64,000 nt of DNA. Source: Marsupella aquatica. Its lineage: Eukaryota; Plantae; Marchantiophyta. This document shows, piece after piece, positions 23,714-51,647 of this stretch; position 1 is the stretch's first letter, and every line of letters begins with the position of its first letter. Under the pieces are notes generated by a model. The model was not told where the DNA came from. It saw nothing but the letters and a program-made list of their open reading frames with translations, and did not search any database. The DNA is taken from positions 14,139,934-14,203,933 of the forward strand of contig OZ316899.1 of assembly GCA_973895155.1 (NCBI GenBank), in the 5' to 3' direction. The translations under genes were made by a program, and so were the position numbers.

Positions 23714-24539
23714 CACTAGTAGAAACCGGGGGGTATTTAGACCCCATTAAACGACTATTCAGTACCGTATAGGACTTGGAAACGACTGGGAAGGACTCTA
23801 GTCCTTTATAGGACTGCGAGTCGTATGTTTTGTTACTATAATCAACTGAGTCCTTTATAGAACTGGTTTATAAGTCGTTTAATAGACTGGATTTTCAGTC
23901 TATTTTAGTCTTTGTGTGGGTAGCTTTGGTGAGTCGTTTTTAGTCTTTTATGGGCTGCGATGATGAGTCGTTGGGAACGACTAAAAAGGTTATGGAGGGT
24001 AGTCTTTAAATATACTTTGTGGGGTATGTATAAGTCTTTTATGTCAACTGGATATGAGTGATGAAGACCCCACTATACTACTTGGAATGAACCCACTCTT
24101 GTGCACAAATAACATATTGCATTCATGTTTTATTGTGTACTTGGAATGAACTCACTCTATAAGTTCACCATTCATCATGTTAACATTAGAATACATAGTT
24201 TCAGAAAGCCATCTTCTATACCATGTACACTAATATGAATTCACAGATTCAAACTTCATAGACTACAAAGAAGGTCACAAAGTATTCCTCTATACCATAC
24301 ACACTAATACTGAAATGATAAAATAGATTCAAGTATCATAGACAATCACCATAGAGCCATAGTTTGACATCAATCACTTGTTTCATACATACAGAATTCA
24401 GAAATATCAATGTCACACACAACGTCTCCTTCATCCTCTTTACCAAATGGAAAAATTGGTACAGATATTTCTTGGATCTTTCCAAGGCAATGTCAAAATG
24501 TGACACAATTCACATGATGCTATCTACACTTGCATTCAG

Positions 24540-27500
24540 TCACTGCAGACTAACACACTCTGATGGCCAGAGCACAAGAGATCCTACTGCATCTGCAATT
24601 ATTTCCTGAGGTGGATCATCGTCTCTATTCGGAAATGGCAAATTACAATCAGATACAATCACTGTAGTCAACAACATTACTACATGGTCATCCGGGACCA
24701 CTTTGCCATGGAATTTTGCATGATCCGGTCGCAAAATGCCTGTACCCACACATACCTGCGAGTCATCCTCTCATGATAGAAGATTATGGACTGGCTCTGC
24801 TGTGGCTATCACCTCCACCTTACCCTGGCTGTTTTTCTTGGCTTTCCTGGGTGGCTTATACATGACATTATTCATACCTTGGTTGCGAGTCATGACTTTG
24901 GCACGAGTGTTTTGTGCTGGTGATCGAGAATTGGCTACACTCTTCTTCAAAGAATCTGCATCCATATTTGACACTTCTGATTGTGTAGCAGGATTTCCCT
25001 GCGACATCATCTCAGTATTTGCCAACATTGTACTTGCTTCAATTGAAGCATCTACAATCTTACTTGCATCCAATGTTGCTCCCAAGTTTCGACGTCGCTT
25101 CACCCTACTCCCACTTGGTTGAGAGTCTGTCAACTCTGCATCAACTACAATTCAGTGTCATGTCCAACATAAGTCAATCACTCATCACATGTGCTAAATG
25201 TACATGTCACCAACCACAAAGTTGTCACTATCTCCTTACCATTATGAACAGCCTTCTTCCCCTTCTTTGCCATTGCCATATGCTCCATGTCTGCTTCTGT
25301 TGATCAATAAACACACCACAATATTCAGGTTGAATCTATTAACCACTGAATTGTTGCTCAACATTCATATAGAGGAATTTAAAGCATCAGCTTACCTGAT
25401 ACCTCCTTGGCTATGGTCACTGAGGCACTGGGCACATCTTCTTCATTATTGCTCTTTGAATCACCTGATACATCAATCATGATGTCACTTCAGATCCCAG
25501 TTCATCCAACCAGTTCTTACAGAAAAGATTACCTCCAACCGGCTTAAGCTTCACAAAACTCCATGCACTTTTCAAATGTAATGTATTGGATCATAGCAGG
25601 TTACCTGTCTCAGCAACCTTCTTGCCCTTCTGCTTACTGATTACAGGGTCCTTCTCTGCCTCCACTCTTCCTGCATTCAAACCATTCACTCAATTCATGA
25701 AAACTTACTTCTAACATTTGAACATAGGACACAATGAACAATGGGCCGGTGTCATTTCCATACCTGTGTCAGATTTGCCAATTCCCTTTTTTGTTAACAA
25801 GGGCACACTTTGTACAATGTTGCCCTCATTGTTTGGTTGGGAACCACCCAATTTTTCAATCACAAGCTTGAAATTAGATTCCACTGATGCAAGAAGGTTC
25901 GCTACAGATGCCTCCACAATATCCAAACGATCAGCCAATTTACTTTCCACTCGAGGGAGTCCACACTCTAATGACTTCAACCGTTCACACATCTCTATGA
26001 GAGTTGTAACAGTTCCCTGTCATAACACAGCTTACATATCTCAGATAACTGTCCCCAAGAACTGGTTGCTTACTTCCTACTACATTTCTTTCTGATGCTC
26101 AAGGCCAAATAGTCACAGAACATACAGAATTACAACATAATCACCTGTTTGGAAGTTACACTTGTCACCTCACTCCTTTGTTTCATGAACTCCTCTCTCA
26201 CTTCTTGTGCTGATGGTTCTTCACCTGTCAATTTCTTCTGCAGTCCACATCAACATACATATGAATGAAACCAAGTGTTGATTGTCAATGAAAATGTAAT
26301 AATGGTAGCAAGATGATAAGTTTGAGGCTTACTATCAGGCATGTCACTGCCTTACCAATTGTTCTTTCACTGGAGCATAACTTCCTCTCCCAGCCTGTGA
26401 AAGGTGTTTCACTTTGCCTCGAGCATTTGACATCAGTTCACTCTTGCTCTGTCCAGCCTCCGACATGAACCCTTTGATTAACCGTGTCCATTGATCCAGT
26501 TCCAATGATGGGGGTGGTGGCATTCTCCTGTTAGAACCATTGTCTATCCACATCCTTTTCAACCTATGCCTCTCTTGTTTCAAAATCCTCATTGCATAAT
26601 CTGATATGCAATCTTCAACTGGGCCCTTACCATCATTACCAACATACTCCCACCGTTCAAGAATGTCCTTGCAGATAGCAGCCCAATCAGCTTTGTTCTG
26701 ACTCCTAAACTCTGTAATGCTCAAATCTAACCAACGCAATACTTCTCCTCTTAGATCAGAATGCCAACGGTTCTTACCATCACATGTGGGAGTTATCCAA
26801 CCTTCGGAATTCACTTCTACTTTACCAAATTTGTTACTGTCTCCTGCCTTGGTACTCCCTGAAGCGCTACTAGGTGTCCCTCCACGGCCTGGTGTCCCCC
26901 CACGGCCTGGGGTCCCTCCACGGCCTGATCTCCCCCCACGGCCTGGATTGCATTGTCCAAACCTCCCTGGAGTCCCTGCACATTTACAGGATCCATTTAC
27001 AGTCACTTACATTAGGTAAGTATGAATCATAAATCCCGCTGCCAAATATACAGTGGACTTCAGAGCAATTCTGCAATGACCAAGTTACCTCTCCCTTGGC
27101 GCATAGATGGTTCTGGACCACCTGTCCTATTGCTTTGTCTTGATGAATTAGGGGCGTTTCTCCCGCCTGTGAATGATTGCCTCCTATCTGAACGTGGATG
27201 GCCTTTGTTGTTTTCGTGATTGTCCCAATCAGAGTCTGCATACCAACAGGTACATGCCACACTCATGGACCTGTAAGATAAACTCTTTGCCCTAGCTACA
27301 CATAAGATAAGTGCATATTGAGCTAAATCTCTACTATCATCACAAAATCACTAGCACAAGGCACTTACTTGTCCAATCATCCTCCTCACCTTTCCATTGC
27401 CCTCTGTACCCGTCTCTACCACGCTCTGGGTGTTCATATTCATCCCATCCATCTTCTGCTCCATCATAGTCATCATCATAATTATCAGGCGTCCCTTGCC

Positions 27501-27711
27501 AATAACTCTGGCTCCTTCTAGGGTATGGATTATGTGATTTCTCTCTAGCTGCCCACCTACCTGGGACTTGATGAGGGCCCTGTGCATCTTGCACAGGTGC
27601 ATTTTTCTGTGAGCCCCCTGCATCTGGGTCTCCATCCATATCCAATCTTTCCTCTTCACCCCACTCTCCAAGCCCCATGTCTGTCTCCATGTCATCACCC
27701 TCTTCCCCCAT
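24540..27711 (-). CDS. Multi-exon TnpA-like protein of the inner element
   Basis: Exons with GT-AG borders; PGRGGT repeats; Ptta/En-Spm-type motif NARGKVKHLSQAGRGSY; C-terminal FHGKVVPDDHVVM...LPFP...DAVGSLVLWP typical of Tnp1/TnpA tails. Exact exon borders partly uncertain. Confidence 0.8.
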
Positions 27712-27888
27712 AGCTTCTGCACAGCACCCACAACCAAACAGGGAGAATCAGCACACTAAATTCAAAGTATCAATCAATTTCATGCATATCCAACTATCCT
27801 AAACATCATTCCAGGCAGCAATTCCCGTTATGTGACTTTGTGCAGGTAGTCATCCTCAACCTCATACTTGCCAATCGCCAGCTGTTGC

Positions 27889-30800
27889 CTATTGCAAATC
27901 ATCAACCTCATCATATTCCATTTGCCCAGGTTCATCATATGTCTCTCTCAATGTTAAGGGGATGTAGTCAGTCCCTGCCCGAGTTGGAAGTACAGTCTCA
28001 TGACTAGGATGCTCGAATGCAGCATGGTCATCCAAACTGAACTCTACTTTACTTCCATCCATCCGCCTGTTCCGTGCTTGGCTATGGCATACCACCCTCC
28101 AGCCATGTGACTCCTCCACATCTGCAAAGAAAGCCTGTTCAACTTGGCTAGGGAAAACAAAAGGCTCAGACCATTCTGGTACTCTGGACCTAAAATTGGC
28201 CAACAAGAACCCATCATGATCACGCTTCATGGTGGCCCTTGGTCTCTGCCACTCTGATTTCACCCATGATCCCTTCATCAATATCACTGGGACACTTGTG
28301 TTACCATAATTCAACACCCAAATGTCGGTCAACTCCCCCACGTAACCCATCTTCATCCACCCCCTCTGTTCTTCAGAGGTTCTCTGCTCAAACACAGAAA
28401 TCAAACCACAATCATATGATACACAATGGTCACCCTGCTCATCCCTCACTCGATAATGATTTCCATAAGCTCTCATCCGTTTGTAGGTCAGAATAGACAA
28501 TCGTGGTGGCACAGATAGAAGATACAAATCCTTCTCCATATCTGGGTGATGTCTACTATGCTCTCGAATTGTCACCCGAATCCACTGCTCGAACTATGGG
28601 AAGGGATCCTGCTGCCCAGAGTGTGCAGCTTTTTGCATATCATATTCCCTGCATTATGAGGTACAGGCATAGTTAGGTCTAAACAACACATGACAATCTA
28701 AGATCACCCTTGGAACAGACAAGAAGCATCACAACAAAGGCAAGTCAATTCAATCACTCACCTCCACCATGGTTGCATAGGCTCTGTGTTTGCCAGCACA
28801 TATGAATGAGCCTTGTCTCGAATCGCAACAGGCAGCTGAACAGCACGTCCCACACCTTCAACAACCTCGCCACTCACTCCATCATCTTCACCAGATTTCC
28901 AAACTCTTGTCATAGCTTCACCAGACCCAGCCATGTACTCTGTTAGGAATCCCAACGTCTCATCCTTAATGTACCCCAATGCCATGGAAGCCTCTGGCCT
29001 GTAGTATGTTCTCACATGACCTTTCAACAACTTCATGTATCGCTCCATAGGGTACATCCATCTGGTACTGACTGGCCCATACTGCCCTAGCTCTTCTACC
29101 ACATGGATTAGGAGATGAGTCATAACATCAAAGAAAGCAGGGGGGAAGTATATCTCCAAGTCACAGAGGACATAAGCAGCATCCTGCTTCAACTGCTCCA
29201 ATCCTTGGGGATCCCACACTTTCACACATATACGGCGAAATACATTGCACAGTCGAAGAATGACATTACGGACTGGTTTCTGCATGAGACCTCTGAGGCA
29301 TAGGGGCAGAATGTGCTGCATCAACACATGGTAGTCATGTGTTTTCATACTGCCAAGTTTATTCTTTGTAATATGCTTCTTGAAGGCACCAGCATAGCCA
29401 GAGGGCACTTTCAGACAGCTCAATCTATACAAGAATGTCTTCCATTCATCCTGTGTGCACACATAGGGAGCTTGGAACTTGAGAAGTACATTGGGATTGC
29501 TTGCATGGGGCTTCAACCAAAGGTGAGGGCGAATCCCCTTCTGTTGCATATCAGCTCGAACTGCTCCTGTATCTTTCTCACCCGACAAGAACTTCAGCAA
29601 GCTCTCACAAATATTTTTCTCAATGTGCATGACGTCCACATTGTGTTTGCTGGGCTCGAATTCCTGCACTCCACAAAGCAAAGAATTCAACAACAGAAAC
29701 ACTAATTAACCACATAGGAGGATTGTAACCAACATCAATCCACCATTGCTCCAATCTAAAATTGCAATCATACAGGGGCTGGAGGCTAAGTACATTACCC
29801 TCCAGTACTCCAACTCCAAGTCCATCAAGGTCTGTCTTTTCACACCGTGTTTCACCACTGGATCCTCAGGTTCTCGATCAGTGGCACTTCTCTTGTCCCA
29901 ATCAGCCTTCCTGGCTGCCCACCTCAGGACTTGCTCTCTGGTGACCCTCTGTGGTGGGCCACGAAGCTCTGTTTTGTTGTTGAAGTGTGCAATTTGAGAC
30001 CGTGTGTGCCTGTAAGGATGATCAACAGGCAAATACCTTCTATGCCCCTGAAATTTCATACTGTGCAGGGCATGCGACCACTCACTTGTCACATTTTTCC
30101 CACATGGTGTGCACCCCACATAGCCCTTTGTCACTCGTCCAGATATGATGCCATGGCCTGGGTAATCTGCTATATCCAGCAAACAAATTGCATGCAGTCT
30201 AAAGGGGCTGGGTCAAAGAAGCCCCTTCAGAACATCATGGGTTAACACCCCTTCTATCCACAAAGTCTTCCACTCTTCCACTGCTGGAGCCAACATGATA
30301 TCTATGAATTGCTCGGTCACAGAAGCTGGTCCAGGGATTAACAGCACCATCATGACAAAAAACCTCTTTGTAGTCATCCATGGGGGAAGGTTGTAATTTA
30401 GCAGCGTAACCGGCCAACATGAATAACGGTTGTTTTTGTCTCCAAATGGGTTTACTCCATCCAGTGATAGACCAAATCGAAAGTTCCGCTTCTCTGCAGC
30501 AAACTGTGGCCACCTCTCATCAACAAATTTCCAATGGTTGGAATCTCCAATGTGACGCTGCAGGCCATCACTGCTCTTGTTATCAGGAGTCCATGTCATC
30601 AGCTTGGAAATGGCAGGGCATCTAAATAGACGTTGTAGTCTAGGAATGAGAGGAAAATGACGAAGAACCTTGGCAGGGTGTGTACATTTCCCTACATTCT
30701 TGTACCTGTGCTTACCACAATGAGGGCATGTCAATTTATCTGCATGCTCTTTGCGAAAGAGAACACACCCATCAGGGCATGCGTCAATAGACACATAGTT

Positions 30801-31589
30801 CAGCCCAAGGTTAGACATCAATTTCCTAGCCTCGTACATATTTTTTGGAATTGAATTACCATCTGGTAACACATTTCGGCGCAGGAAGGTCAACAACTCT
30901 GTCACAAATATATTGGGAACATTGTGATTGCCACAGATGTTCAACAACAACACGACAAAACCCAGCTTGGAGCAGTTCGACCCCTCGTAGATAGGAATGC
31001 AAGCTTCTTTGATGTGTTTTGGGCCCCCAAACACCCACTCCCTCTCTGCTGCACCTTCCCCAATGTCAAAGTCAGGTTGAGCTTGGCCGTCGCCAATGTG
31101 TGGCTGCGGTTCATTGTCCTCTTCTGATTCCACTGTGTCGTAAAAAGCATCAAGGTCTTCAAAAATCTCTTGAACCATTCTTGGGACATCCATCCCACCG
31201 TCCTCAGTGATTGCCTCTACATCTCCATCTTGGTCATCCACGTTCTCATGTTGGACCCCAGGACCATCCTCTGCACAGTCTATGTCCTGCTCTACGTAGT
31301 CTCTACGCCTAGCTGTATTAGAATCCACAAAGTCAGCTCTCCACTCTTCATCAGAGGAGTCTTCTTCTGCTGGTACATTCCAAACCCTCCACCGAGGGTG
31401 CCTTTCATGCCGCAGCAGGTGAAGGTGCACAGTGTTCAAACTCAACGACTTGAATCCTTGGCACTGTGTGCATGGGCATCTCATCCTCCTACTCCTACCT
31501 TGGGCGGCCCGGGCTTGTTCACGCATCCACAATTTAGAATCATGATGCCTAATCCTAAATGGGTTGTGAAGAGGCAACCTTGGAGCCAT
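27889..31589 (-). pseudogene. TnpD/Tnp2-type transposase of the inner element (two introns, two in-frame stops)
   Basis: Motifs RCPCTQC, IDACPDGC, FPLIPRLQRLF, LSLDGVNPF, YNLPPW, DYPG, DVMHIEKN, MKTHDYH, RWMYPMER, EPFVFPSQVEQAFF. TGA at 30213 and TAG near 28592 interrupt an otherwise continuous spliced frame. Confidence 0.95.
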
Positions 31590-31915
31590 CACTATACACA
31601 CGCACTCAGCACCCTGTCATTTTATTATGCAAGTGAAAAATACACTTCCTGTTAAGGATTTCACCCCCGACTGTACTTGCCAAAATACGTAACGTTCCAA
31701 AAAAACAAAAAAACAAAAAATATAGGTGCCTGAGTCATGTACCTATTCTCAAGTGAATGAGACAAAATTCCTAAATGTTTGAGGGTGTCAACTCCTCCGC
31801 TGTCCTCACATGTACTGCCTCTGCACGTACATCCATGACCATATCAGAGTCCAATCATGTATAGTCATAGACACAGGTGCCAGGTGCGAGACCGGTGTGA
31901 GATGTCCTCATCTTA

Positions 31916-32485
31916 CTACCACATCAAATACGGATACCAATCCTGTTGTCGATGCCACTCAGCCCTGAGGTACTCAGGCATGTACATTAAGTCATCAAGG
32001 TCTAAACCCTGCTCATGCCATGGTGGTCTTCGATCCGTGCCTACAAGCAATGGCAGCAGTGCCCTCCATGGTGCACATGTTGCTACCAAGTCCCTCCACT
32101 GGGTACTAATTAGTCTATATTTGCAGATATCTTGTGCGCCAGACACCACAAGAACCCTCGGCCAGACATGTGTAAGAACTATATCATCTGCCAAATCAGG
32201 CAACAAGGAACCACCTACAGCATCGTGCTTGTCTAACTCATCTGCTGAAAAGTAAATGTCCTCTTCCGACTGTGCATCCTCATTCACCACAGCATTCACA
32301 ACACATCCAAGGTCTGTAGGCATTATCTCGGATGGAGCTACACTCTGTCTGGTTACCAATCCACACAAGTAAGCCCAAGCAGTAGCCATGCACGATGCAA
32401 CCCGTAGGAGGACCCTACATAGGGCCTGACGGTCTGGAAGAGGCAGCATACCCACCAAAGTCTTCAGCCAAACAGAGCCCAGCAA
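31916..32485 (-). CDS. F-box-like protein with no recognisable substrate-binding domain (cargo)
   Basis: SLLPDLADDIVLTHVWPRV...ICKYRLISTQWRDLV matches the F-box pattern LPxLPDDIxxxIxxRL...xRxVxxxWxxL. Start codon uncertain. Confidence 0.72.
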   Translation of the reverse strand: MLGSVWLKTLVGMLPLPDRQALCRVLLRVASCMATAWAYLCGLVTRQSVAPSEIMPTDLGCVVNAVVNEDAQSEEDIYFSADELDKHDAVGGSLLPDLADDIVLTHVWPRVLVVSGAQDICKYRLISTQWRDLVATCAPWRALLPLLVGTDRRPPWHEQGLDLDDLMYMPEYLRAEWHRQQDWYPYLMW

Positions 32486-32625
32486 GTAGATTCACAGTCA
32501 CACCCCACGCAGCAGGAAACAACAATCACTTCAACTGCGACCAACCATGACAAGATGAGTTAGTTCAAGGATCACATTTATTACAAAATTGTGTTTTATA
32601 CAAAAATATGAGGGACTCCTACTCC

Positions 32626-33474
32626 TCACTCTCTCCCACCTTTGCTAAGCATACATCTCCGCTGAATCTTGGAGGGCCAGACCTCAAAAATATCAAAGTC
32701 CCAAGCATTCTGTCGCTTCCCTCTAGCTGCTGATTCCAGAAGCCAATCAGGGGAAAGCACCCAAAGATTGTTGTTCATGACAAAATCACGCACTGTTGTC
32801 TTAAAGAATTTTCTGCATATTTTCATGTATGACAGACCTACAACATGAGTGGAGGTTTCTGTTAGACTCTCCTCCACTGTCCCACCTAGCTCAACAACTA
32901 TAGACTTGTACAGTCTGCACTTAGTCTCCCCAATTCCTTCTTCTGCAAATACCACACTGAACCCCTTCATAATGGTATTTCTCTCCTTGCCATGCTCATT
33001 CAATATAGCATCTGCACGCATAGGATGGTGTCCTATGTTGACAACAGGTCCATATTGGACAGAAGCAAAGTTGGGTTTCTCTGCCGCTGCTTCATAGGCT
33101 TCCTTTTCAGCCAAAGCCTCTGTAGTGGCCTCCTCACTCTCCCACAACTCATATTGCTCAGTACTCTGTACACACCTATGTTTAACAGAATCGGTCAGCC
33201 AAGAGACTTCAACTACTTTTAGACCTTGGTTGGTAATGGCAGAATCAATGAAGGACCATGACCACTTGTTCATCACATCCAGCCATGTCCCCGCAACAAC
33301 ATGTGTAGTCTGTGGAGTGATGTCCTTGACTTCAGTCCCATGGAACTCTGAGAATTGTTTTTGTACGATTGGCCAACTCACTTGGGTGAACCCATAGTGG
33401 CCAGGAATCAAAATGGCTTTGATTCCAGCCAACAGAGGCGGGTGGTCAACCTTTGTACGTTTTCTAGAGGCCAT
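32626..33474 (-). CDS. Tandem two-BRCT-domain protein (cargo)
   Basis: Two repeats with BRCT hallmarks: HGTEV...TTHVV...VVEVSWLTDSV...YEL and LGGTV...STHVV...VLSPDWLLESA. Basic N-terminus MASRKRTK. Intronless and uninterrupted. Confidence 0.88.
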   Translation of the reverse strand: MASRKRTKVDHPPLLAGIKAILIPGHYGFTQVSWPIVQKQFSEFHGTEVKDITPQTTHVVAGTWLDVMNKWSWSFIDSAITNQGLKVVEVSWLTDSVKHRCVQSTEQYELWESEEATTEALAEKEAYEAAAEKPNFASVQYGPVVNIGHHPMRADAILNEHGKERNTIMKGFSVVFAEEGIGETKCRLYKSIVVELGGTVEESLTETSTHVVGLSYMKICRKFFKTTVRDFVMNNNLWVLSPDWLLESAARGKRQNAWDFDIFEVWPSKIQRRCMLSKGGRE

Positions 33475-34072
33475 GTACACACGGGCCACCTAATCACTGC
33501 AGACCAGAAGATAATGCGTTCACCTGATAATCGGAGGGCCCTTAAAATGCTGCGTTTATAACTTGGTCCAGTCCAGTCGTCTGGTGAGTCTCTGCTCCGA
33601 TTCCAAACGGGAGAAATATTGGGACAAACGTACTAGACACCTGCAAGCATGCACCTCATAGTTTGAATATGTGCCTTCACAATATTGAAGGTGACAAGTG
33701 CAATTGTTTTGTGATGCCACATACAGATGTTGTAAATGGGCAGACATTCAATGAGAATACAAAATGTTGGTACACTTTAAGGGAATTCTCGCAAATTAAA
33801 TAGCCTTGTAACTTATATGCTCATAATGAGAAGTCCTGATTTAATTTAAGCAGTGTCATGTAAGTCGTGATCAAAATGATTGCAGAGTTAAAAAAGTTCC
33901 TAGAAGGCTTAAGGGCAGTTTTTGAAGGCATGTACCCAGGAACAAGTAATGAACTTAGGGTACTTGTTGCCTAAGCATCCTCTCCTACAGAGGTCCTTCT
34001 TCTCAAAATTGGAATGTCTGCAATCTCCAAGGTATCCACATCAGGTGCACTATGCATGTATATTATTCAGGT

Positions 34073-34753
34073 TCAAAGCCAAGAAATGTGATCTCTCATG
34101 GGAGTGTGCAAAGTAGGATCTATGGCATGGCGATGACAATAGAAGATCCATCGATCAACACCATGTGCAGAGTGATCATAGATGTGTCTGTCACAAGCAT
34201 AGCCTTCTGCTTGACGCTCCTTCAAACAATGAAAGTGCCACATGGTGGGACACCTAACACAGTGGACTATGTCCACCCAGAAATCTTCATCGTGCTGACC
34301 ACATGCCTTGCACTTATGAAGTGGGCAAGCTGTGGCAAGATCGGGCAAACATGAAAAACAAAAGAACCTCACACAATATCTGTCAGGGCATTTCCTAACA
34401 AGTGGTGGAGCATCAACAGAGCCCTCATAAGACCCCAACTTCCCACACTGTGCACACTTAGCCTGCTTCTCCAAACAATCAGTGCACATCCAGCCTCCCT
34501 GGTGTGCTGACGGGAGGCCCACCCCTGGACAGTTGTTTTCTGCAGCAAGGTCAGACTCCGGGTTGAGGTGGAAATGCCTCATGCAAGGGCCCTCACATAT
34601 GGCTAAGCCACCACCATCGTCACAAATGGCACAACAATGAGCTGCCTTCTGGAAAATCTGACTTGCGGAGAAGTTACTACCATCTGGCCCAACTACACCT
34701 GTGTTGCTCACCTCTGTCCCCCGCTTCTTGGCTCGGATTTTAGGGCGTGCCAT
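34073..34753 (-). CDS. EDM2-like multi-PHD zinc-finger protein (cargo)
   Basis: CAICDDGG, CEGPCMRHFH, CAQCGKLGS, CPLHKCKAC, CVRCPTMWH and FYCHRHAIDPTLHTPMRDH occur in the order I recall for the plant EDM2 PHD cassette. NLS-like N-terminus. Uninterrupted 226-aa ORF. Confidence 0.88.
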   Translation of the reverse strand: MARPKIRAKKRGTEVSNTGVVGPDGSNFSASQIFQKAAHCCAICDDGGGLAICEGPCMRHFHLNPESDLAAENNCPGVGLPSAHQGGWMCTDCLEKQAKCAQCGKLGSYEGSVDAPPLVRKCPDRYCVRFFCFSCLPDLATACPLHKCKACGQHDEDFWVDIVHCVRCPTMWHFHCLKERQAEGYACDRHIYDHSAHGVDRWIFYCHRHAIDPTLHTPMRDHISWL

Positions 34754-35422
34754 GCCTACGCATGAGACAGATAGTACAATTTAGCAGAGTGCACGGACAA
34801 TACAATTTAGTGCAGTGTACAAAAAGTACAGTGTAGCATATAGACTAGAGTGGCAATTGCTACTGCAATGAAATGTTCACACACATGTGCAGAGTAGACA
34901 TACTTTTTGGTTTGTTGAGCCCACACTAAAAACTGATCCCCTCGTACAATAGCTCCACCTACACCTCAATTTTGTGGCTATGATTCACCAAAGGAGATCT
35001 GCAACAAGATTTAATGCATTTGAATCACATATAACAGTCGTGACATGTAAAACAGGCATTTTTTGAACAGGATTGGTATCAAGCACTGTGATCAGGGTTG
35101 TAATTTATACATCCTAAATAGGCTATGATAGTGAATGAGACAAATAAGTTAGGCAGAAATCACTTTTTCCAGGTTATCACATGGCCCATTAATTCCAGTC
35201 TTTGAAAGGAGACTTTTAAGTGAGCTTGCTAGCCTCTTAAATTAGGATATTGTACTTAGTGCAGCCATAATAGGATAAGTTATGTACTGTTGACCCTAAA
35301 CCCTGGACCCAAAATTGGTCATAATTCAAAATCTTAAGTAAATATCCTCTCTGTTCAAGTCAAAGTGTTAAGTTATAGGTCAATGGTCTCTGGTTTGTGC
35401 ATGCGGTGTGACAAGTGGTCCT

Positions 35423-35872
35423 CTAGAGCGTGTGATCCAAACATGTGTAGACACCAAAGTGACCGGTGGTGGGGTCTGGGAGGGCAGGACAAGTGACATC
35501 GCCAGGCACACTGCAGGATGGCGAGTGGTTCCAGATGATACATTGTGCTCTGTGAAAAAACCGACATCCAAGAGAACGGTCATCCAACTCTAGGCCAGAA
35601 GCCCTACAGGCAGGACAGTCATATTGGCAACTGTGCACACACCCTTGGGCCCTAATTTGTGGCGGGTCATGTATGAGAGACAGAAATACCAAGGATGTTG
35701 GGAAGGGTGGAGAAGCAGGTACAGGCCGGCTGTAGTTGTTCCTGGCAACAACTGGGTACTCAAAGTACCATGCAGACTGGGCTGGAAGGATCCCAAGTCT
35801 GACATACTCAAGGCGCAACATCTCTGCCTTGCGTGCAAGCCGCACATGTTCAGCATTGCGGGTCCTCACCAT
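35423..35872 (-). CDS. Hypothetical Cys/His-rich 149-aa cargo protein
   Basis: ATG-initiated ORF (MVRTRNA...) co-oriented with the other cargo ORFs; contains CVHSCQYDCPAC. No family recognised. Confidence 0.45.
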   Translation of the reverse strand: MVRTRNAEHVRLARKAEMLRLEYVRLGILPAQSAWYFEYPVVARNNYSRPVPASPPFPTSLVFLSLIHDPPQIRAQGCVHSCQYDCPACRASGLELDDRSLGCRFFHRAQCIIWNHSPSCSVPGDVTCPALPDPTTGHFGVYTCLDHTL

Positions 35873-36138
35873 AAGTGTTGCTTTTGTGGAGATGTCGTGT
35901 GTTCACGTCCTCTGATAAGCACCTTCGATCAGCAAGGTGAGCAGGAGCTGTACTTGCCTCACCAACAGCAACCAACCTTAAATTATCAGTTCCCACTCAC
36001 TGTGTCATTCCATTGGTTCCAGCTAGGGGTCACAGTGTAAACATAGCATGAAACACTCCTAATCAACTTGCTTACAAACTACAATATCCAGAAAGAGTGA
36101 AAGTCTCACCCTCCAGTGAGCAGCAGAGAGGTAGTTCA

Positions 36139-36669
36139 CTAGATGTGTTGATGTGCAGTTAAACCTCCACTATTGCTTACTTCTGGTGTATGCTGCTCAG
36201 AAGAAGACATATTAGTAGCAGCAAATTGCAAATAATGGCCATAAGCAAACCGTGAGAGTTTGCAGAATGCTACGACAAATCCATCACAGCAGTGCTCCAC
36301 AGGAATGAAACCAAGCAAAATTTGGTGACCTCGGCCAATGACAAGACCAATGTAGTGAACAATCCTTGACCGATCAGGATATGGATTGGAATTACAATTA
36401 GTCAGCTCTTCTTCTTTGTTTTCTAACTCTGGGGGAAATGAGCATGACCAGGGAATTCTTTGAGAAATAGAAGTGCACAGGGAAAATGAAATTGGCTCAT
36501 TCAGCTGCGCAAGACCGGCCATTGCAGCAAACTTGGACAGTTGTTCCGCAATACATAAAATACCCTGACTTACATGCAATCGATACAATCTGCTTCTGTT
36601 GGCTGTCCTACAGCTCACGGTAGTGCCGTTGGGATAGGGTAAGTGAATATTGCCATAGCTGAAGCACAT
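36139..36669 (-). CDS. Hypothetical cargo ORF (up to 176 aa)
   Basis: Long, co-oriented ORF inside the inner element; no motif recognised. Confidence 0.3.
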   Translation of the reverse strand: MCFSYGNIHLPYPNGTTVSCRTANRSRLYRLHVSQGILCIAEQLSKFAAMAGLAQLNEPISFSLCTSISQRIPWSCSFPPELENKEEELTNCNSNPYPDRSRIVHYIGLVIGRGHQILLGFIPVEHCCDGFVVAFCKLSRFAYGHYLQFAATNMSSSEQHTPEVSNSGGLTAHQHI

Positions 36670-39600
36670 TGAGCTTGCAGCAAGAAGTGAAGGAGCATGG
36701 CCAAAAGCAGAAAAGACAGACAGGTTTTACAAGAAGAAACTAACAACCGCCAATCTGCTCAAATCCGCTGCATAGATCAAACCCTCCAAACTACACAGCC
36801 CTCCTTTGAAAACAATCCAATGTGCTTTGGCTGGTGGATGACAAGGACTGGGAGAAGAGGAAACGTCTACACAATCAATCCCAATGACGGGACACAGAGA
36901 CCAGGCACAGAGAGGATTTGTGCTTAGACAAAAACCACAAATTGTAGCATGGGCGCCATAGCATTGGGCGGCAATGGGAAGAATTACATCAAATGAGTGG
37001 ACAGAGAATGAACAGTCCGGTTATAGGCAAACAGCGACTGATGCCCTGATGCAATGAAACACGCATTGACATAGCGGAGGGACATAAAAACTACATAAGC
37101 CAACTTACTGACCTTTTAAGGCCCACAATTTCAAGGGGAGGGACAAAGACAGCAATAACAGACGCAGAGACAAAGCTGTACTCTGTCAATTGAGTAGGCA
37201 AGTGGGTGGGTGAAGATCAACAACCAATGTAGCAGCGCAACCAGAGTAGCAACAAAGAAGCAGGTTGCCCTCAGTCTCCTATTTTTCAAGCAGCTCGTGC
37301 TCGCGGTCAATCTCCTATTCTGCAAGCAGCTCACGCTCGTCCCTCTTGTTCTGCAAGCAGGTCATTCTTGTCGGCGATGGTGCAAGCTGTCCTCCTAAAC
37401 TCTGACACTCAAAATGAAAAGACCAAGCACCTCCAATCTGTTTGATCCCTTCCGCAAGCAGCCGAGCGGCAGACGATAATGTAGGGATCAAGAACCAAGT
37501 GCCAGGCGGACATTGCACAAAATGAGGACCGGGGGCAGAGACAAAATCTACCGAAATCTACCGAAATCTACTTCTTGGGGTCCAGCCCACGGATGGACAT
37601 CATGCAAGGTGGTCAAAAATGGTAAGTGCAATTGTTGGAGAGCTGTACTCGCGATTACTAACGGTGCATCCACAAAACGCGTCATCAAGTTGTCAGTGCG
37701 GCCACAACAATTTTGACAGTCTCAGGATCACAGGTCCACAAACAAGTTGCAAATGAAGACACACAACGTCCAGGAGGGAAAGTCTGCAACACTAACCCTT
37801 TGTAAAGCCCCCGAGCTTACCTTCTAGCTGCCGACGCAAAGAGAAAACCTACTCGGACACTGAAGCAACCCTAAACTCAAAGTCTCACCTTAGCGCAACA
37901 ACTCCTGGATTGGATTCAGCTAGCTCAGGCTCAATGAAGCATGTCGCCTTGGGCTCTCCGGATCCTCCCAAGGCAGCAAACAAGTTAGGGTCCACGGTCC
38001 TTGTACCTTCACCGCACCGTTGTGTCCTTCCCAATGCCTCCTCTGTAGTTGCGTCTTGTCTGCAACTCTACAGCTCCCCGTGTTGCTCTGCCGCACTTAG
38101 TTATATTCCAACGCCCGATCGTGACCAAAAAGAGTTTTCTCCTGCTGGACAGCACTAGGCATTTGTTCAATCTCTTGATCACGTGTAAGCAGCTACAGGT
38201 ATGAATCACTCAGTTGGTAGCTCAATACGCTTACAGCAAGAGGGCGCAATAGGTAGAAGCTCGCGCTACCTAGACCAGCACAAGGACAAAGCATTAACAT
38301 TGAAACTGTACCATGGAGCTGGAGAAAACCACAGAGTAATTGAAGCCTAACAATACCCTTCTTAGCTCCCGACTCCAAACTCTCGGCTCCCAGTTTGCAA
38401 GAACAAGCACTATGAAAATATGGATTCCCACATTGACTGTGTCCGCAGAACAGATGCAACCCGCATGCAACTTCACCAGCTCAACGGCAGCTTGACAACT
38501 GAAGGACCTCCCAATGAGCCTCACGGCCTCCCGATGCTCGTTATGGGTGCAGCAAAAGGGTCTATACCACAACTGTGACCGAGATTGTCACCCAAAACCT
38601 TGAAGAAACCCCAACCTCCGACTCCTCAAACTCCGACAAGCTCCTCACGAACATTGCAGCAGCCACAACCTTCTTCGCCCTACCAGCCAAAAACTAAATG
38701 TCCCTAAAGGAGATCGAGCAGGAATGCAGGTCTATGAGTAGACTGCAAGCGCAAGGTTAGATCACTGCAACTGCCTGAACACTGCTCCTCGAGAGCATAA
38801 ACAAGCACATAACGCGCGGGAAGTTCACTCCGCAATGGTTGCAAAAAGTGGGCAACACTGAAAGGAAAACCCTACGTAAAACCCCGAACACTCCACCCCT
38901 CACGTTCTAAGTTCAATGACAATGGCGAAAACTCCAAAGAGACTCCCAAAGTGAAGTTTAGTGCCTGAAACCGAATTAGGGGAAGCCACTCAGCCTTACC
39001 GTTTGAGTGAGCCGTTGAGTGTCACCCAAAGTGGGACAAAGCTACAAAGTGTTACTGCATGGCCAACTTAGGCAATGAATGGTCATATTTGCACATACAT
39101 GGTCGGTAGTGACATTTTATTGCACGCCGTAATCAGGATTAAGGTTGCCCAACATTATATCCGGTCCTAAAATGCAATATTCCCGGTGCAAGAATGTGAC
39201 CTAGCTCTAATGTATGAAAAAGGACCGGTACAAATCTACCTTTGTGCATCTTGACCTTTTATAGATGGATTTAGTAATGGCCAAGAATATCTTGACCATC
39301 CCTCCATGGTCCAACCTCCATGAACCCCACTTCATTAAACCCAAAACCTTTTTGGTCACAAATAAGGACATTTAATGAGTTATGCCCCTTGCTATCACCC
39401 TCTTTATAGATTTATTTTTTTGTTTGAAATTTTACATTTATTCCGCGTGAACCCCACGGATGGGGGAACCAGTAGGCCAAATGGCATCATAAAACCTCAA
39501 CACCCAAAGGAGGCAATAACAAAGAGTTACTCAACCAGGGTCATCAGATCAGGCAAAGATTGCGAAGCCGTTCTTCTAGTGGTCCATGCAACAAGTAACA

Positions 39601-42377
39601 ACTAGGGAATAAGCACTAGAAGGCGCAGTAGGTCAGCATAGTGTAAGTGTAAAGTGTCAAAGCATTGTCTAGTACTAAATTAATCCACCTGATTAGTAAG
39701 AAGGGGGTGTATACTGTAATGGGAAAAAGAAAAAAAACCAAGGCATGAGCAAGGGCCACCAAGAGTGGTGCAGCTATAAGCTATAGGGATTGAACACAAT
39801 GCGGGGGGGCAGTGGCACTATGTATGAGGAAATCACGGGAGTATCGGTGTCAAATGAGTCGACAAAACTCCCAGATAGCCACACAGTATAAATCAATCTC
39901 ACAGAAGGCTGCCATCAATGGAGGAAACAATTTGACACGACCCACATCTGAGAGTGTGAATTCGCTCGATCTCCAGCAGTTCTTTGGCACTCGATAGACG
40001 TCGGTGCTTTCGGCTCAAAGATGAAGGAGAATTACCCCTCCTCAACATAGAGTGAACATTACCCATGATGTGCTAGACTATTCACCCTTCACAAAGTAGC
40101 AAGGTTACTTCTCATAGTCTTTTAGTGAACCATAAAACTCTCATAGTCTTTTCTAGTCTTCAACAAAACCGGTGCAATGGGTGCGAGTTGTTTTAAGTAT
40201 GGAAAAAGGACTTAGTGGGCATAGTCCTATAAGGTATGGTCTAAATTGCCCCGGTTTCTACTAGTGTAAACTCCCTTCTCTGGCCAACAGGAAGCACCCA
40301 TGGGGTTGAAGGTCGATGTTCTATCCCTGTGATAGGATCAATTGTGACCCATACATCTGGATGCATCTCAAGATCCTCACAAGCCTCCCTGAAGTTAGTG
40401 TCCTTTTCTCCATAGAAAGCCTTTATCAAAGCCTTTCTCACATTTCCCTCAATGTGCATGGGGTCTAATAGATGGCGGATCTTCAACTCTCCCCAATAAG
40501 GCAAAGTGGTTAATATACTCCATCTAGTCAACCCACTACCCTCAAATTGCATGGGATCCTCCGGTTTTGCCATTCTATCAGCCAAGTCTTTCCAATGTGC
40601 AAAAGTTGTTGGCTCTGGTATATCACGTTCATCACCAAAGGACATATCAATGGAGGAAAATAGTAGTGGGTCAAACCTCATCTGATGGCCCATTGGCAGA
40701 AACTTTGTATGCCCAAGATAAACAATCTTGTGAAGGTGTGATGAGTACTTGGCTATATCACCAAGACTTGGGCCACAAGTGGAGCAGCCTTGTAGCCTTG
40801 GGTTTACAACCCACTCACAAAGCCAAATCCTGGTCATATAGACACACATAATGTACAATTAGCACATGGAAATGAGGGGATAACATGCATTATCATATCA
40901 TGCTGGATGTAAACAAAAAAAAGTGTTGTAGTTTCATAGTTCTTACCTGGGTAGTCATGCATGGTCCACATACAAACCCCTTTTAGTTTAAAAACCCGTG
41001 GGGTACCCCCTGTAGTCTTTCAACCGTCATATGCCCATATTCCGTCCCATAATTTTTGGAGTTCCTCAACCACTAATGCCAAATAGGTGTCCATGTTCTT
41101 CACCTTCTTTGGCCCTGGGATAATCAAAGATAGCAATCAAAAGCCCTTTTTCATGGACAACCATGGTGGAAGGTTGTAATTCATGAGAACCACCGGCCAA
41201 ACTGATGTAGGTCTCCCCTTCCCTCCAAGTGAATGAGGGCTAACCCCATCTGATGCCAACCCAAGTCGCACATGCCGAGGGTCACGCTCAAAATCTGGCC
41301 ATGTTGACTCCACATGTTTATGAGCAAGAGAGTCAACTGGTAATCGCATCACACCGGGCTCCGAACGATGCTTCTTGTGCCATACCATCAACTCGGCCAA
41401 GTCAGAACATCTATACATGTGCAACAAGCGAGGAATAATGGGGAACCAACGAACTGCTTTTCTTGGCACCTTCCCGGTTAGCATGTTTGGGTCATACCGT
41501 GGCTCATGACATACTGTGCATTCTGTCATATGGGCTTTGTCCCCATGAAATAATATGCAATCATTCACACAAGCATGAATGATATGGTAATCCATGCCAA
41601 TGGATGAGAGAATCTTCTTTGCATCCTTCCAAGTTCCATGCAACACATTCTCCAAGGGTAACATCAAGTCATGACAATATTCAAATATGTCTGATAACAT
41701 AGAATTGTTTGCCTTATGTTTGGCCTGAATGTTCAACAACCCCAAGATGGTTGACAAACGACTCAACCGAGCACCCTCAAAGATAGGTGTCCGGGCATGT
41801 TCCTCAGCCTCCTTCCATTGTTGTTGTCCCTCTGGAGTATGTTGTGGTCGTGGGTCATTTTGGGGGGCAGCTCATTCAACACTAATGTCAGGGACACCAT
41901 CTTCAACATCAGCACCAAACCAATCAACCATGAAGTCATCCATGGCTCTGTCCTGATCATGCATGACCTGGTCATCAGTCTGAGGTGTTGCTTCCTCATC
42001 ACCATGATCACTTACATCATTACTTGATGAGGAATCATCCTCTGATGGTTCTCCCTCTTCTAGCATGCCCATCTCCCGATATGCTGCTCTCAACCTTCGT
42101 GGTAACATTTGTTGAGATGGTTGCACATTCTACGCACATCACAACCAAAAAACCTCTTGATGTACATTTCACCAGGTACAACAAAAACAGACTTCAGACC
42201 ATTCATTCAAGACAAATTAACAATCAGTTTTAAGGATTGATTGCATGCATTCACATTAAGAACTTAAGTGAAGGGCCACACCAAAATTATACTACTCCAA
42301 AATGAGGCCAGAGGACATGTATATAATGATAAGTGTGAAGTACACACAAGGTACAAGAGGATGTATGACATGGCTCC

Positions 42378-42924
42378 CTAATCCCACTCATAGTGTGTGA
42401 ATAACTCATCTCCAGCTCTAATAGTCCTAGTGGCAAGAACTAAGCAATGGTCCTTATGATATGTCATTCCATATGGTGCCGACATTGGGCCATCAGTAAA
42501 AACCCACTCACAATTGGCCCTACGCTTGGGTCGAGTCCCCACAGTACTATTTATAAAGCCAGCAATATTCCCATTACTCCCAATCTTCCCAATCTTCCCT
42601 AAACTCTTTGATGATAGAGGCAATCCGTAATATTCCCTAAGACTCCCAATCTTTGATGATAGAGGCACACTTGCCAGTGAATGAACAAATGCCCCACCTA
42701 CCCTCAACTAGTGTTCTTGATGGGTCATTGGGTGCTCGTGGCCTCCTCTTGGACTGGGGCCTGGACCGGGGTCTTCGTGTCTTAGTGGGCACATGAGACT
42801 GTTCCTCTTCAGTCCCATGATTTGTACTGATCCCTACACCCAAGGCTTGTGAAAGTGCATTGCCTATAGCATCTAAAACTCCTTGTGATGGGACATAGGG
42901 TGGTGGTGTCACCGATCTACGCAT
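42378..42924 (-). pseudogene. SET-domain remnant within the outer element (C-terminal half of the domain retained)
   Basis: GNIAGFINS...ANC...VLATRTIRAGDELFTHY matches the SET signature GNxARFINHS...N...AxRxIxxGEELxxDY. The middle is scrambled by short duplications at ~42563-42667. Confidence 0.8.
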
Positions 42925-50994: not shown

Positions 50995-51647
50995 ACCCTA
51001 AACCCTAAACCCTAAACCCTCATATTCCTCTCTCTCTCAATGAGCCTCTCGTTGGTGGATTTAGGGTTTAGGGTAACATCAAGTCCCAAGGGTTTAGGGT
51101 TTTCATTTTCCCTGATGTTTTCATTTTTTTAGGTTTCCGATTACCATTAGCCAAGTACGGGATGAATTTCGGTCGTTTTACGACTAGTTTAGCTGGATTA
51201 GGGTTGGGTATAGCTGTTTTACCTTGTGTTACATCAAACATGATGGGGGTCCATGAAAGAAGGAGCTTGCCATGCGGGTCCATCAAGAAATTTAGAAACT
51301 TGCCACCATCCTCATACTAAACCAATGGCCTAGTCCAATTGATGCTTATCATCATACTTGTCATTCCGGACATCCATCCTTGCTGGACTACGGAATGTCC
51401 AACCCGCCCTACACGACTCCCGCGCATAGCCTTGGTTGATGACTACTATAGTCCTGTTCGGGTTCACTACCAAGATCCATGTCCTATGGGTTTTCCGGTG
51501 ACAAAATGGACCGTAAATGGCTGTGTTTCAGCTGGCTTAGACTTTGGGGCAACCACCTGCTGTGCGCCCTCTATTTCGTGCCACGTTTTCATTGTTGTTG
51601 CCCACCGTCCTAAACCCTAAACTGTAAACCCTAAAACCCTAAACCCT
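50995..51647. repeat. Short interstitial telomeric repeat clusters in both orientations
   Basis: (CCCTAAA)3+ at ~50996-51020, TTTAGGG copies at ~51060-51100, degenerate CCCTAAA run at ~51609-51647. Confidence 0.8.

What the first reader, a model, noticed from the sequence alone, without database searches (positions are those of the whole stretch)
34073..34753. Stand-alone EDM2-type PHD cassette inside a transposon
Seen: a 226-aa protein made only of a basic N-terminus and three Cys/His fingers, ending YCHRHAIDPTLHTPMRDH. Known: Arabidopsis EDM2 binds H3K9me2-marked chromatin through this cassette and, with ASI1 and AIPP1, promotes full-length transcripts across heterochromatic introns. Inference: a reader-only version could mask H3K9me2, act as a decoy, or recruit RNA-processing factors so the silenced element still makes full transcripts.
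Basis: partly seen in the sequence, partly recalled or inferred. Interest (0 to 1): 0.87.

Follow-up and report, generated by a model that had tools for sequence, protein, structure and literature searches.

The report
Transposon-carried EDM2-type histone reader gene
A plant cut-and-paste (CACTA) transposon carries a small intact gene for a three-finger PHD module of the EDM2/NSD type; related transposons have kept it under selection, so the element seems to encode its own chromatin-mark reader, whose job is still untested.

Summary
Window 34073-34753 (minus strand) is an intact 226-aa ORF with a basic, disordered tail and three Cys/His fingers. It lies in a 16.5-kb CACTA element (23714-40266) with perfect 18-bp inverted ends and a TAA target duplication, upstream of a twin-BRCT ORF, an F-box-like ORF and the transposase.

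It is an EDM2/NSD-type PHD1-3 cassette:
- Profile-profile match to host EDM2-type cassettes: probability 100%, E 5e-45.
- 35% identity to a protein NCBI names EDM2.
- Family profile against NSD2 PHD1-3: E 9e-11.

It is not an EDM2 orthologue. It lacks the RFD-like and C-terminal domains and the insert in PHD2.

About ten similar short ORFs (36-82% identical) form one well-supported clade outside all sampled host clades. They keep the same start, the same stop and nearly all zinc ligands. dN/dS is 0.23-0.39, and three more loci place the ORF beside a BRCT ORF and/or a CACTA transposase. It is therefore a selected transposon accessory gene, not captured junk.

The proposed functions (masking H3K9me2, decoy, recruiting RNA-processing factors) remain untested, and I found no RNA evidence. 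This copy's transposase has two in-frame stops. The scan has noted the same cassette in at least nine other places in this genome.

The parts
34073..34753 (-). 226-aa ORF encoding the stand-alone EDM2/NSD-type triple-PHD protein (stop codon at 34073-34075)
34640..34753 (-). Residues 1-38: basic tail. Residues 1-24 are predicted disordered. Probably a nuclear localisation signal (inference).
   Evidence: dN/dS 0.47 here against 0.19 in the finger core
34469..34639 (-). Residues 39-95: first PHD finger, atypical, with a long His-to-Cys spacing
   Evidence: Pfam PF23011 at 39-93; AIRE PHD1 match
34313..34468 (-). Residues 96-147: second finger. It is compact and lacks the insert of about 20 residues found in plant host EDM2-type proteins.
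   Evidence: Pfam PF22908 at 96-140; alignment gaps
34076..34312 (-). Residues 148-226: third (variant) finger and its C-terminal extension, ending in the conserved DHISWL
   Evidence: Pfam PF23004 at 148-180; alignment A1; homology to EDM2 runs to residue 223
23714..40266 (-). The carrier: a 16,553-bp CACTA (En/Spm-type) transposon with its genes on the minus strand
23714..23731 (+). Terminal inverted repeat at the element's 3' end, preceded by the TAA target-site duplication at 23711-23713
40249..40266 (-). Terminal inverted repeat at the element's 5' end, followed by the TAA target-site duplication at 40267-40269
32626..33489 (-). Twin-BRCT ORF, the next gene downstream. The same neighbour is present in L002 and L008.
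31916..32485 (-). F-box-like ORF between the BRCT ORF and the transposase (weak Pfam hit only, E 0.079)
27889..31601 (-). CACTA transposase (Transpos_assoc, Transposase_21, DUF4218, DUF4216). Two in-frame stops interrupt the 31601-28758 frame, so this copy is decayed.
35423..35872 (-). 149-aa Cys-containing ORF (starts MVRTR) upstream of the PHD ORF. Earlier notes of this scan list it as part of the same cassette. I did not study it.

Best explanation
The ORF is an accessory gene of a CACTA transposon lineage. It encodes a small, probably nuclear protein that consists only of an EDM2/NSD-type triple-PHD module. Shown: it is homologous to the whole EDM2 cassette. It sits inside a transposon bounded by inverted repeats and a target duplication. 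Diverged elements keep the same ORF upstream of the transposase. Selection keeps the zinc ligands, the start and the stop. Inferred: the protein binds modified histone H3 tails as the EDM2 cassette does, and acts in trans for the element. My preferred action (about 0.35) is interference with heterochromatic silencing. Either it occupies H3K9me2-type tails in competition with host readers, or it helps long transcripts cross the silenced 16-kb element. Next (about 0.25) is tethering the transposition machinery to marked chromatin. The confidence figure below is for 'selected transposon-encoded chromatin reader', not for one of these two actions.
For: Identity:
- hhalign of the transposon family (A1) against host cassettes (A5): probability 100%, E 4.9e-45, 187 columns, query 33-224.
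- BLASTP against Cryptomeria EDM2: 35% identity, query 41-223 on 254-455, E 2e-32.
- Profile A1 against NSD2 residues 647-801: E 9e-11.
- AlphaFold2 model: pLDDT 84.9, pTM 0.79. Its best structural matches are NSD tandem PHDs and PZP domains.

Transposon gene:
- TIRs and TSD read directly; transposase domains downstream.
- L008: PHD, then BRCT, then Transposase_21, then DUF4218.
- L006: PHD followed by an ORF 53% identical to the window's transposase.
- L002: PHD followed by a BRCT homologue.
- The PHD ORF diverges in step with the transposase: 43% against 45% in L008, 46% against 53% in L006.
- Thousands of short contigs from several labelled organisms lie on the region, which points to a high-copy repeat.

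Selection:
- dN/dS 0.23 (0.15-0.37), 0.39 (0.26-0.59) and 0.28 (0.18-0.42); no bootstrap replicate reached 1.
- The ORF is 85% and 82% identical to L001 and L004, against 77% and 68% in the flanks.
- Synonymous sites are saturated between distant copies, yet 22 of the 24 putative ligands are invariant in six copies.
- The transposon ORFs form one clade with SH-aLRT 100.
Against: - I have no RNA evidence: the runs holding the stretch are of unknown type, none is on record as RNA, and all are stored as contigs.
- I have no evidence of histone binding or localisation.
- This element is a decayed copy, with two in-frame stops in the transposase, so this particular ORF may no longer serve anything.
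- The window ORF alone falls just under all three Pfam cut-offs.
- Most relatives come from one series of runs, and one truncated variant is identical in three of them. The family may therefore be sampled largely from one species or genus.
- The complex prediction with the BRCT neighbour gave no verdict.
- A reader without sequence specificity would help all silenced elements, not only its own, which makes an anti-silencing role harder to maintain by selection.
Confidence: 0.6

Rival explanations
1. Chromatin tether for transposition. The reader binds a histone mark and brings or activates the transposase complex on chromatin of one type, setting where the element inserts or excises. It may act with the BRCT protein at the double-strand breaks of cut-and-paste transposition.
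For: The ORF is kept next to the transposase in every longer locus. In three of four loci it is also kept with a twin-BRCT ORF, a fold typical of DNA-damage signalling. This copy inserted into another CACTA's transposase gene, that is, into repeat DNA. From general knowledge, reader domains attached to mobile-element machinery usually act in targeting (the RAG2 PHD finger, chromodomains of chromovirus integrases).
Against: No interaction with the transposase was tested. The one complex test, with the BRCT protein, gave no verdict. One nested insertion in a repeat-rich window says little about target choice. L006 lacks the BRCT ORF between the PHD ORF and the transposase.
Confidence: 0.25
2. 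The ORF is one exon of a longer spliced product, for instance PHD joined to BRCT or to the transposase, and not a stand-alone protein.
For: A YAG lies 2-10 nt upstream of the ATG in 8 of 9 copies, often behind a pyrimidine-rich stretch. CACTA elements of the En/Spm type are known to make several products by alternative splicing (general knowledge). All the cassette ORFs lie on one strand in a row.
Against: The stop codon directly after DHISWL (DHISWI in L003) is kept in five of the seven aligned complete copies, down to 38% identity. L002 reads on for nine more residues and L006 ends differently. The MARP start is kept as well. An acceptor in front of the ATG would give a leader joined to a complete ORF, not a fusion. 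Homology to the EDM2 cassette ends three residues before the stop. The contigs L001, L004 and L002 are colinear with the genomic arrangement, with nothing spliced out.
Confidence: 0.08
3. A passively captured fragment of a host EDM2-type gene (Pack-CACTA style), carried along without function.
For: Plant CACTA elements are known to pick up host gene fragments (general knowledge). The cassette is clearly homologous to host EDM2-type proteins.
Against: dN/dS is well below 1, and the ORF is better conserved than its flanks. The ORF boundaries and nearly all zinc ligands are kept in copies only 36-54% identical, whose synonymous sites are saturated. The same gene order is found in diverged elements. 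The transposon copies form one long-branched clade outside the moss, liverwort and seed-plant host clades.
Confidence: 0.04
4. A domesticated host gene that only happens to lie within transposon remains.
For: Short PHD-only proteins named EDM2-like exist as host genes in grasses.
Against: The ORF lies between matched TIRs with a TSD. It is high-copy in read sets. It recurs beside transposases of differing sequence. Earlier notes of this scan list the same cassette at many other places in the genome (I did not check those places).
Confidence: 0.03

Closest known systems
Arabidopsis EDM2 and its plant orthologues (PHD cassette)
   Same: The same three-finger cassette from end to end: hhalign probability 100%, and 35% identity to a protein named EDM2. 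EDM2 is reported to bind H3K9me2 and to act at transposon-derived heterochromatin (PMC7529245).
   Different: It lacks the N-terminal DNMT1-RFD-like domain seen in the EDM2-named hits P0155 and P0042, and any region after the cassette. The acidic, PGR and ELP/methyltransferase-like regions are as described in PMC7529245. It lacks the insert of about 20 residues in finger 2. It is encoded by a transposon and falls outside all sampled host clades.
Short PHD-only host proteins of grasses that NCBI names EDM2-like (for example rice Os03g0266600, 345 aa)
   Same: These are also little more than the cassette. They show that a reader-only form exists as a normal gene.
   Different: They nest among seed-plant EDM2 sequences in the tree. 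Related grass-like transcript contigs (L011, L014, L016, L017) encode an extra C-terminal motif ending GSCGW(L/V)DD. In the gene records shown they are not linked to a transposase.
NSD1/2/3 histone methyltransferases, PHD1-3
   Same: The three fingers are colinear: family profile against NSD2 residues 647-801, E 9e-11. The best structural matches are NSD tandem PHD domains, Z 5.5. Finger 2 has no long insert, as in NSD2.
   Different: It has no SET, PWWP or other NSD domains. The sequence relation is much weaker than to plant EDM2-type proteins.
VANC anti-silencing proteins of Arabidopsis VANDAL (Mutator-type) transposons
   Same: An accessory, non-transposase protein encoded by a plant DNA transposon. 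VANC counteracts epigenetic silencing of its own family (PMC5735166, PMC10398659).
   Different: I found and expect no sequence relation. VANC binds DNA motifs of its own elements, which gives it specificity. A PHD reader would recognise histone marks and has no evident specificity for its own element.
TET/JBP dioxygenase genes carried by fungal DNA transposons, EnSpm/CACTA relatives included
   Same: A host-type epigenetic factor captured and kept by DNA transposons, proposed to help them escape silencing (PMC12730594).
   Different: That factor is an enzyme acting on DNA methylation, not a histone reader, and it occurs in fungi, not plants.
RAG2 PHD finger of the RAG transposon-derived recombinase (from general knowledge)
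   Same: A separate accessory protein, encoded beside the transposase, that reads a histone mark and couples the cutting enzyme to chromatin state.
   Different: It has a single canonical PHD finger behind a Kelch domain, belongs to a different transposon superfamily and occurs in animals. I ran no test of relatedness.

Membership tests
EDM2/NSD-type triple-PHD cassette (Pfam PF23011 + PF22908 + PF23004) | Three fingers in the order PHD1, PHD2, variant PHD, colinear with NSD2 PHD1-3 and the EDM2 cassette | tested here: met
   Pfam order 39-93, 96-140, 148-180; NSD2 alignment; EDM2 alignment over 41-223; hhalign probability 100%, E 4.9e-45
EDM2/NSD-type triple-PHD cassette (Pfam PF23011 + PF22908 + PF23004) | Scores above Pfam's curated gathering cut-offs | tested here: inconclusive
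   The window ORF scores 21.1/27, 17.2/23.9 and 25.8/27 bits, all just under the cut-offs. Relatives P0003, P0005 and P0011 pass one or two models.
EDM2/NSD-type triple-PHD cassette (Pfam PF23011 + PF22908 + PF23004) | A full set of zinc-binding Cys/His (24 ligands for three fingers) | tested here: met
   All 24 positions are present in the window ORF. 22 are invariant in six copies, and C100 and C103 are nearly invariant in 37 sequences.
EDM2/NSD-type triple-PHD cassette (Pfam PF23011 + PF22908 + PF23004) | Binds modified histone H3 tails | not testable with these tools
   This needs a peptide array or a nucleosome pull-down.
EDM2 protein family (orthologue of Arabidopsis EDM2) | N-terminal DNMT1-RFD-like domain ahead of the cassette | tested here: not met
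   Present in P0155, P0042, P0017 and P0026. Absent here: only 38 residues precede finger 1.
EDM2 protein family (orthologue of Arabidopsis EDM2) | Long C-terminal part with acidic, PGR and ELP/N6-adenine-methyltransferase-like regions (PMC7529245) | tested here: not met
   The ORF stops three residues after the end of cassette homology.
EDM2 protein family (orthologue of Arabidopsis EDM2) | Groups with host EDM2 sequences in a tree of the cassette | tested here: not met
   The transposon ORFs form their own clade (SH-aLRT 100) on a long branch, outside the moss, liverwort and seed-plant host clades.
CACTA (En/Spm) DNA transposon | Terminal inverted repeats beginning CACTA | tested here: met
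   18 of 18 bases match at 23714-23731 and 40249-40266.
CACTA (En/Spm) DNA transposon | 3-bp target-site duplication | tested here: met
   TAA at 23711-23713 and at 40267-40269
CACTA (En/Spm) DNA transposon | TnpD-type transposase (Transposase_21, with Transpos_assoc, DUF4218 and DUF4216) | tested here: met
   The reading frame carries two in-frame stops.
CACTA (En/Spm) DNA transposon | Subterminal short repeats | tested here: inconclusive
   Repeated AGGACT-, GACTAT- and AGTCGTT-like words are visible by eye within about 300 bp of both ends. I did not quantify them.
Transposon-encoded anti-silencing factor (VANC-like in function) | Expression causes loss of repressive marks and reactivation of the element family | not testable with these tools
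   This needs transgenic expression with methylation, H3K9me2 and RNA read-outs.
Captured host gene fragment (Pack-CACTA type) | A partial host gene evolving neutrally within the element | tested here: not met
   The whole cassette is present with its own conserved start and stop. dN/dS is 0.23-0.39, with bootstrap intervals below 1.

The most novel reading that the evidence does not exclude
The PHD protein is one arm of a transposon-encoded counter-silencing toolkit: a Cys-rich ORF, the EDM2-type reader, a twin-BRCT protein and an F-box-like protein, possibly each expressed from a shared leader by alternative splicing. That would be a histone-level counterpart to the DNA-level VANC system, and would show that host and transposon use the same reader module on opposite sides.
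Probability: 0.2. Interest if true: 0.85.

Novelty: new variant of a known kind. Interest (0 to 1): 0.6.

Why it matters
Plants silence transposons through H3K9me2 and DNA methylation. Very few transposon-encoded counter-measures are known; VANC is the main plant example. Here a DNA transposon lineage has kept, under selection, a stand-alone copy of the reader module that the host factor EDM2 uses on transposon heterochromatin, together with a BRCT protein. If the protein binds the same mark, it gives a concrete candidate for testing two ideas. One is that transposons interfere with silencing at the histone level. The other is that they steer insertion by chromatin state. The protein is small, folds with confidence in prediction, and would be easy to express and assay. 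My six literature searches found no report of a CACTA-borne PHD or BRCT accessory gene. That is not proof that none exists.

Tried and rejected
- **Reads:** None of the runs holding the stretch is on record as RNA (X7 and X9 are guessed DNA, the rest unknown), and all four laid runs (X1, X2, X5, X6) are stored as contigs. They show a high-copy repeat but nothing about expression. The listed joints have sides of only 20-30 letters, so I did not use them as splice evidence.
- **Complex prediction:** Complex prediction for the BRCT and PHD proteins gave no verdict, score 0.20 against a mark of 0.34. This counts neither for nor against binding.
- **AU test:** a test of whether the transposon clade can be joined to the moss host clade did not finish in three attempts. 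The donor lineage stays unresolved. In the larger tree the best topology puts the transposon clade next to a liverwort group, with support of only 24; the smaller tree does not.
- **Metagenome scan:** one search returned ten loci at 25-46% identity. The seven I read (L011-L017) encode host-type cassette proteins, among them one 1,305-aa EDM2-type ORF and grass-like short forms. No further transposon copies turned up.
- **Naming the organism:** the look-up of P0023, whose cluster holds a Sphagnum protein, led to an unrelated run. I leave the organism as 'a land plant, probably a bryophyte'.
- **Other copies and ends:** there is no second PHD copy in the window, and the TIR sequence does not occur in the fetched loci.
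- **Papers not held:** two papers that might say which EDM2 region binds histones or AIPP1 (PMC3890799, PMC5584460).
- **Rooting:** I considered rooting the tree with NSD-like hits (P0151, P0128) and dropped it, because two long branches would attract each other.
- **Joined models:** I built no spliced or joined model. The transposase pieces were searched separately.

Full report
**1. The observation.** The ORF exists as described. It runs from the ATG at 34753 to the stop at 34073-34075 on the minus strand and encodes 226 aa. Residues 205-222 read YCHRHAIDPTLHTPMRDH, followed by ISWL. The first 30 residues contain six Lys/Arg, and AlphaFold2 predicts residues 1-24 as disordered. The remainder holds 22 Cys and 16 His, arranged as three eight-ligand fingers. 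Pfam finds PHD-1st_NSD, PHD_NSD and PHDvar_NSD in that order, each slightly under its curated cut-off. Twenty shuffles of the window produced no ATG ORF this long.

**2. The carrier.** A search for CACTA...TAGTG pairs found one outstanding pair. CACTAGTAGAAACCGGGG occurs at 23714 and, inverted, at 40266. The match is 18 of 18 bases, and TAA flanks both ends (read directly).

Between these ends, on the minus strand, lie in order:
- a 176-aa ORF and a 149-aa ORF of unknown kind;
- the PHD ORF;
- a twin-BRCT ORF (33489-32626; Pfam BRCT, E 9e-14);
- an F-box-like ORF (weak hit, E 0.079);
- a CACTA transposase with Transpos_assoc, Transposase_21, DUF4218 and DUF4216.

The transposase frame has two in-frame stops. 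At least the first lies within sequence colinear with the Transposase_21 profile, so this copy is decayed. The element sits inside the transposase gene of a second CACTA element: Transposase_21 lies to its right and DUF4218 to its left.

**3. What the protein is.** A search of 1.84 billion representative proteins gave 245 hits.
- The best hits are short ORFs of 166-245 aa, with E 1e-70 to 1e-29.
- Next come long plant proteins carrying the cassette near residues 220-435 of 1,200-1,400.
- Several of those are named ENHANCED DOWNY MILDEW 2 by NCBI (Cryptomeria, Neltuma, Physcomitrium, rice and other grasses), and others are liverwort and moss proteins.

Direct BLASTP against Cryptomeria EDM2 gives 35% identity over query 41-223 and subject 254-455, E 2e-32. 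Against a Sphagnum magellanicum host protein it gives 35%, E 2e-27. Profile-profile comparison of six transposon ORFs with twelve host proteins gives probability 100%, E 4.9e-45, over 187 columns covering query 33-224. The family profile also matches NSD2 PHD1-3 (residues 647-801, E 9e-11) and NSD3.

The AlphaFold2 model is confident (pLDDT 84.9, pTM 0.79). Its best structural matches are NSD2/NSD3 tandem PHD domains (Z 5.5, rmsd 2.6 Å over 84 residues) and PZP domains. These are modest scores that agree with the sequence result but add little to it.

So 'EDM2-type PHD cassette' is right. The protein is not an EDM2 orthologue:
- It has no RFD-like domain in front and nothing behind the cassette.
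- It lacks the roughly 20-residue insert that every plant host sequence I aligned has in finger 2.

**4. It is the transposon's own gene.** Six short ORFs at 36-82% identity share the MARP start. Four of the five relatives keep the DHISW(L/I)-stop ending. 22 of the 24 putative zinc ligands are invariant.

Longer contigs show the same neighbourhood:
- L008, a 13-kb metagenome contig (PHD 43% identical), has PHD, BRCT, Transposase_21 and DUF4218 in that order.
- L006 (46% identical) has the PHD ORF directly upstream of an ORF 53% identical to the window's transposase.
- L002 (54% identical) has a BRCT homologue downstream.

The PHD ORF has diverged about as far as the transposase, 43% against 45% in L008. 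That fits joint inheritance.

Selection is visible in several ways. Among the three closest copies, dN/dS is 0.23 (0.15-0.37), 0.39 (0.26-0.59) and 0.28 (0.18-0.42), and no bootstrap replicate reached 1. The finger core has 0.19 and the basic tail 0.47. The ORF is 85% and 82% identical where the flanks are 77% and 68%. Synonymous sites are saturated between the more distant copies.

Read sets from several labelled organisms lay thousands of short contigs on the region, as expected for a high-copy repeat. In the most distant organism, almost only the PHD segment is covered at 90% likeness.

Caveat: most relatives come from one series of runs, and one truncated variant is identical in three of them. 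The comparison is therefore mostly between diverged element lineages, possibly within one species or genus, and not between distant hosts.

**5. Host against transposon copies.** I built two trees of the cassette, with 117 and 41 rows. In both, the transposon ORFs form one clade with SH-aLRT 100. A long branch separates it from all host proteins. It lies outside a well-supported moss clade (Sphagnum, Ceratodon, Physcomitrium), a liverwort clade and the seed-plant EDM2 group. The grass PHD-only proteins nest inside the seed-plant group.

The acquisition is therefore not recent, or the cassette changed quickly afterwards. The donor lineage and the direction of transfer are unresolved, because the AU test did not finish.

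**6. Expression.** Nothing could be shown. The runs that hold the stretch are of unknown type and are kept as contigs. The fetched contigs are colinear with the genome. A YAG lies 2-10 nt upstream of the ATG in 8 of 9 copies. It is only a hint.

**7. How it most likely works.**
- Shown: a selected, transposon-encoded protein that consists only of the EDM2-type reader module.
- From the literature: EDM2 binds H3K9me2 and, with EDM3/AIPP1 and IBM2/ASI1, prevents premature polyadenylation in heterochromatic stretches (PMC7529245, PMC10852260). Its PHD repeat binds histones in a modification-dependent way (PMC3632883, where it is cited as unpublished data).
- Inferred: the transposon protein enters the nucleus through its basic tail and binds similarly marked H3 tails.

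I put 0.6 on 'selected transposon-encoded chromatin reader'. Within that:
- About 0.35 goes to interference with silencing.
- About 0.25 goes to tethering the transposition machinery to marked chromatin. The constant pairing with the transposase and the frequent pairing with a BRCT protein would suit this role.

Rivals with lower odds are an exon of a longer spliced protein (0.08), a passive captured fragment (0.04) and a domesticated host gene (0.03). The evidence for and against each is given in the Rival explanations section.

**8. Compared with what is known.** In function the closest models are VANC of VANDAL elements (PMC5735166, PMC10398659) and the TET/JBP genes kept by fungal DNA transposons, EnSpm relatives included (PMC12730594). 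For the targeting reading, the closest model is the RAG2 PHD finger (general knowledge). In sequence the closest relatives are plant EDM2-type proteins. Grasses even have host genes that are little more than this cassette.

My six literature searches found no description of a CACTA element with PHD or BRCT accessory genes. I rate the finding a new variant of a known kind: a transposon accessory protein built from a host epigenetic module.

**9. Earlier notes of this scan.** The same cassette has been noted, and in several cases followed up with the same conclusion, at nine or more other places in this genome. I treated those notes as leads. The homology, synteny, selection and tree results above were all computed here on this window and on freshly fetched loci.

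Noticed in passing
window 20929-47837 (candidate outer ends); 40241-41766 and 22785-23747: The PHD-carrying CACTA is nested in the transposase gene of a second CACTA. Transposase_21 ORFs lie to its right and a DUF4218 ORF to its left. The candidate outer ends at 20929 and 47837 share a TTA duplication, but only 17 of 25 TIR bases match.
   Followed up: partly
window 42378-42707 (-): In the outer CACTA, an ORF upstream of the transposase gives a weak SET-domain hit (20.2 bits, cut-off 22.4). A second element may also carry a chromatin-type domain ahead of its transposase.
   Followed up: partly
window 34001-34020 (-); also in L001 and L005: A 20-nt motif, TGCAGACATTCCAATTTTGA, lies about 55-75 nt after the PHD stop codon. 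It is kept nearly unchanged in L001 and in L005, whose PHD protein is only 40% identical. It could be a processing or regulatory signal.
   Followed up: partly
window 34754-34765 (-) and the matching places in L001-L006 and L009: A YAG, often behind a pyrimidine-rich stretch, lies 2-10 nt upstream of the PHD start codon in 8 of 9 copies. It looks like a splice acceptor in front of a complete ORF.
   Followed up: partly
window 28758-31601 (-): The transposase reading frame is interrupted by two in-frame stop codons. The first lies inside sequence colinear with the Transposase_21 profile. The PHD ORF has stayed intact in an element that can probably no longer move by itself.
   Followed up: yes
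window 14982-15040 and 51608-51666: Telomere-like (TTTAGGG)n tracts in inverted orientation, about 36.6 kb apart. They point to a plant genome. I could not tell whether they mark the ends of something.
   Followed up: no
window 56323-56912 against 61677-63999; ORF 58784-62185 (+): Long inverted repeats (86-93% complementary) surround and overlap a 1,133-aa ORF with retrotransposon gag and zinc-knuckle domains.
   Followed up: no
window 9084-9560: Two tandem copies of a unit of about 253 nt, 92% identical.
   Followed up: no
L011, L012, L014-L017 (metagenome contigs); proteins P0037, P0052, P0057, P0074, P0143: Grasses have short host proteins (259-386 aa) that NCBI names EDM2-like and that consist of little more than the PHD cassette. 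Related transcript-like contigs (L011, L014, L016, L017) encode a C-terminal motif ending GSCGW(L/V)DD.
   Followed up: partly
L008 3587-4402 and L002 1322-1891, against window 32626-33489 (-): The twin-BRCT accessory protein is colinear over its whole length in another element but only 26-28% identical. It evolves much faster than the PHD protein (43-54%) or the transposase (45%).
   Followed up: partly
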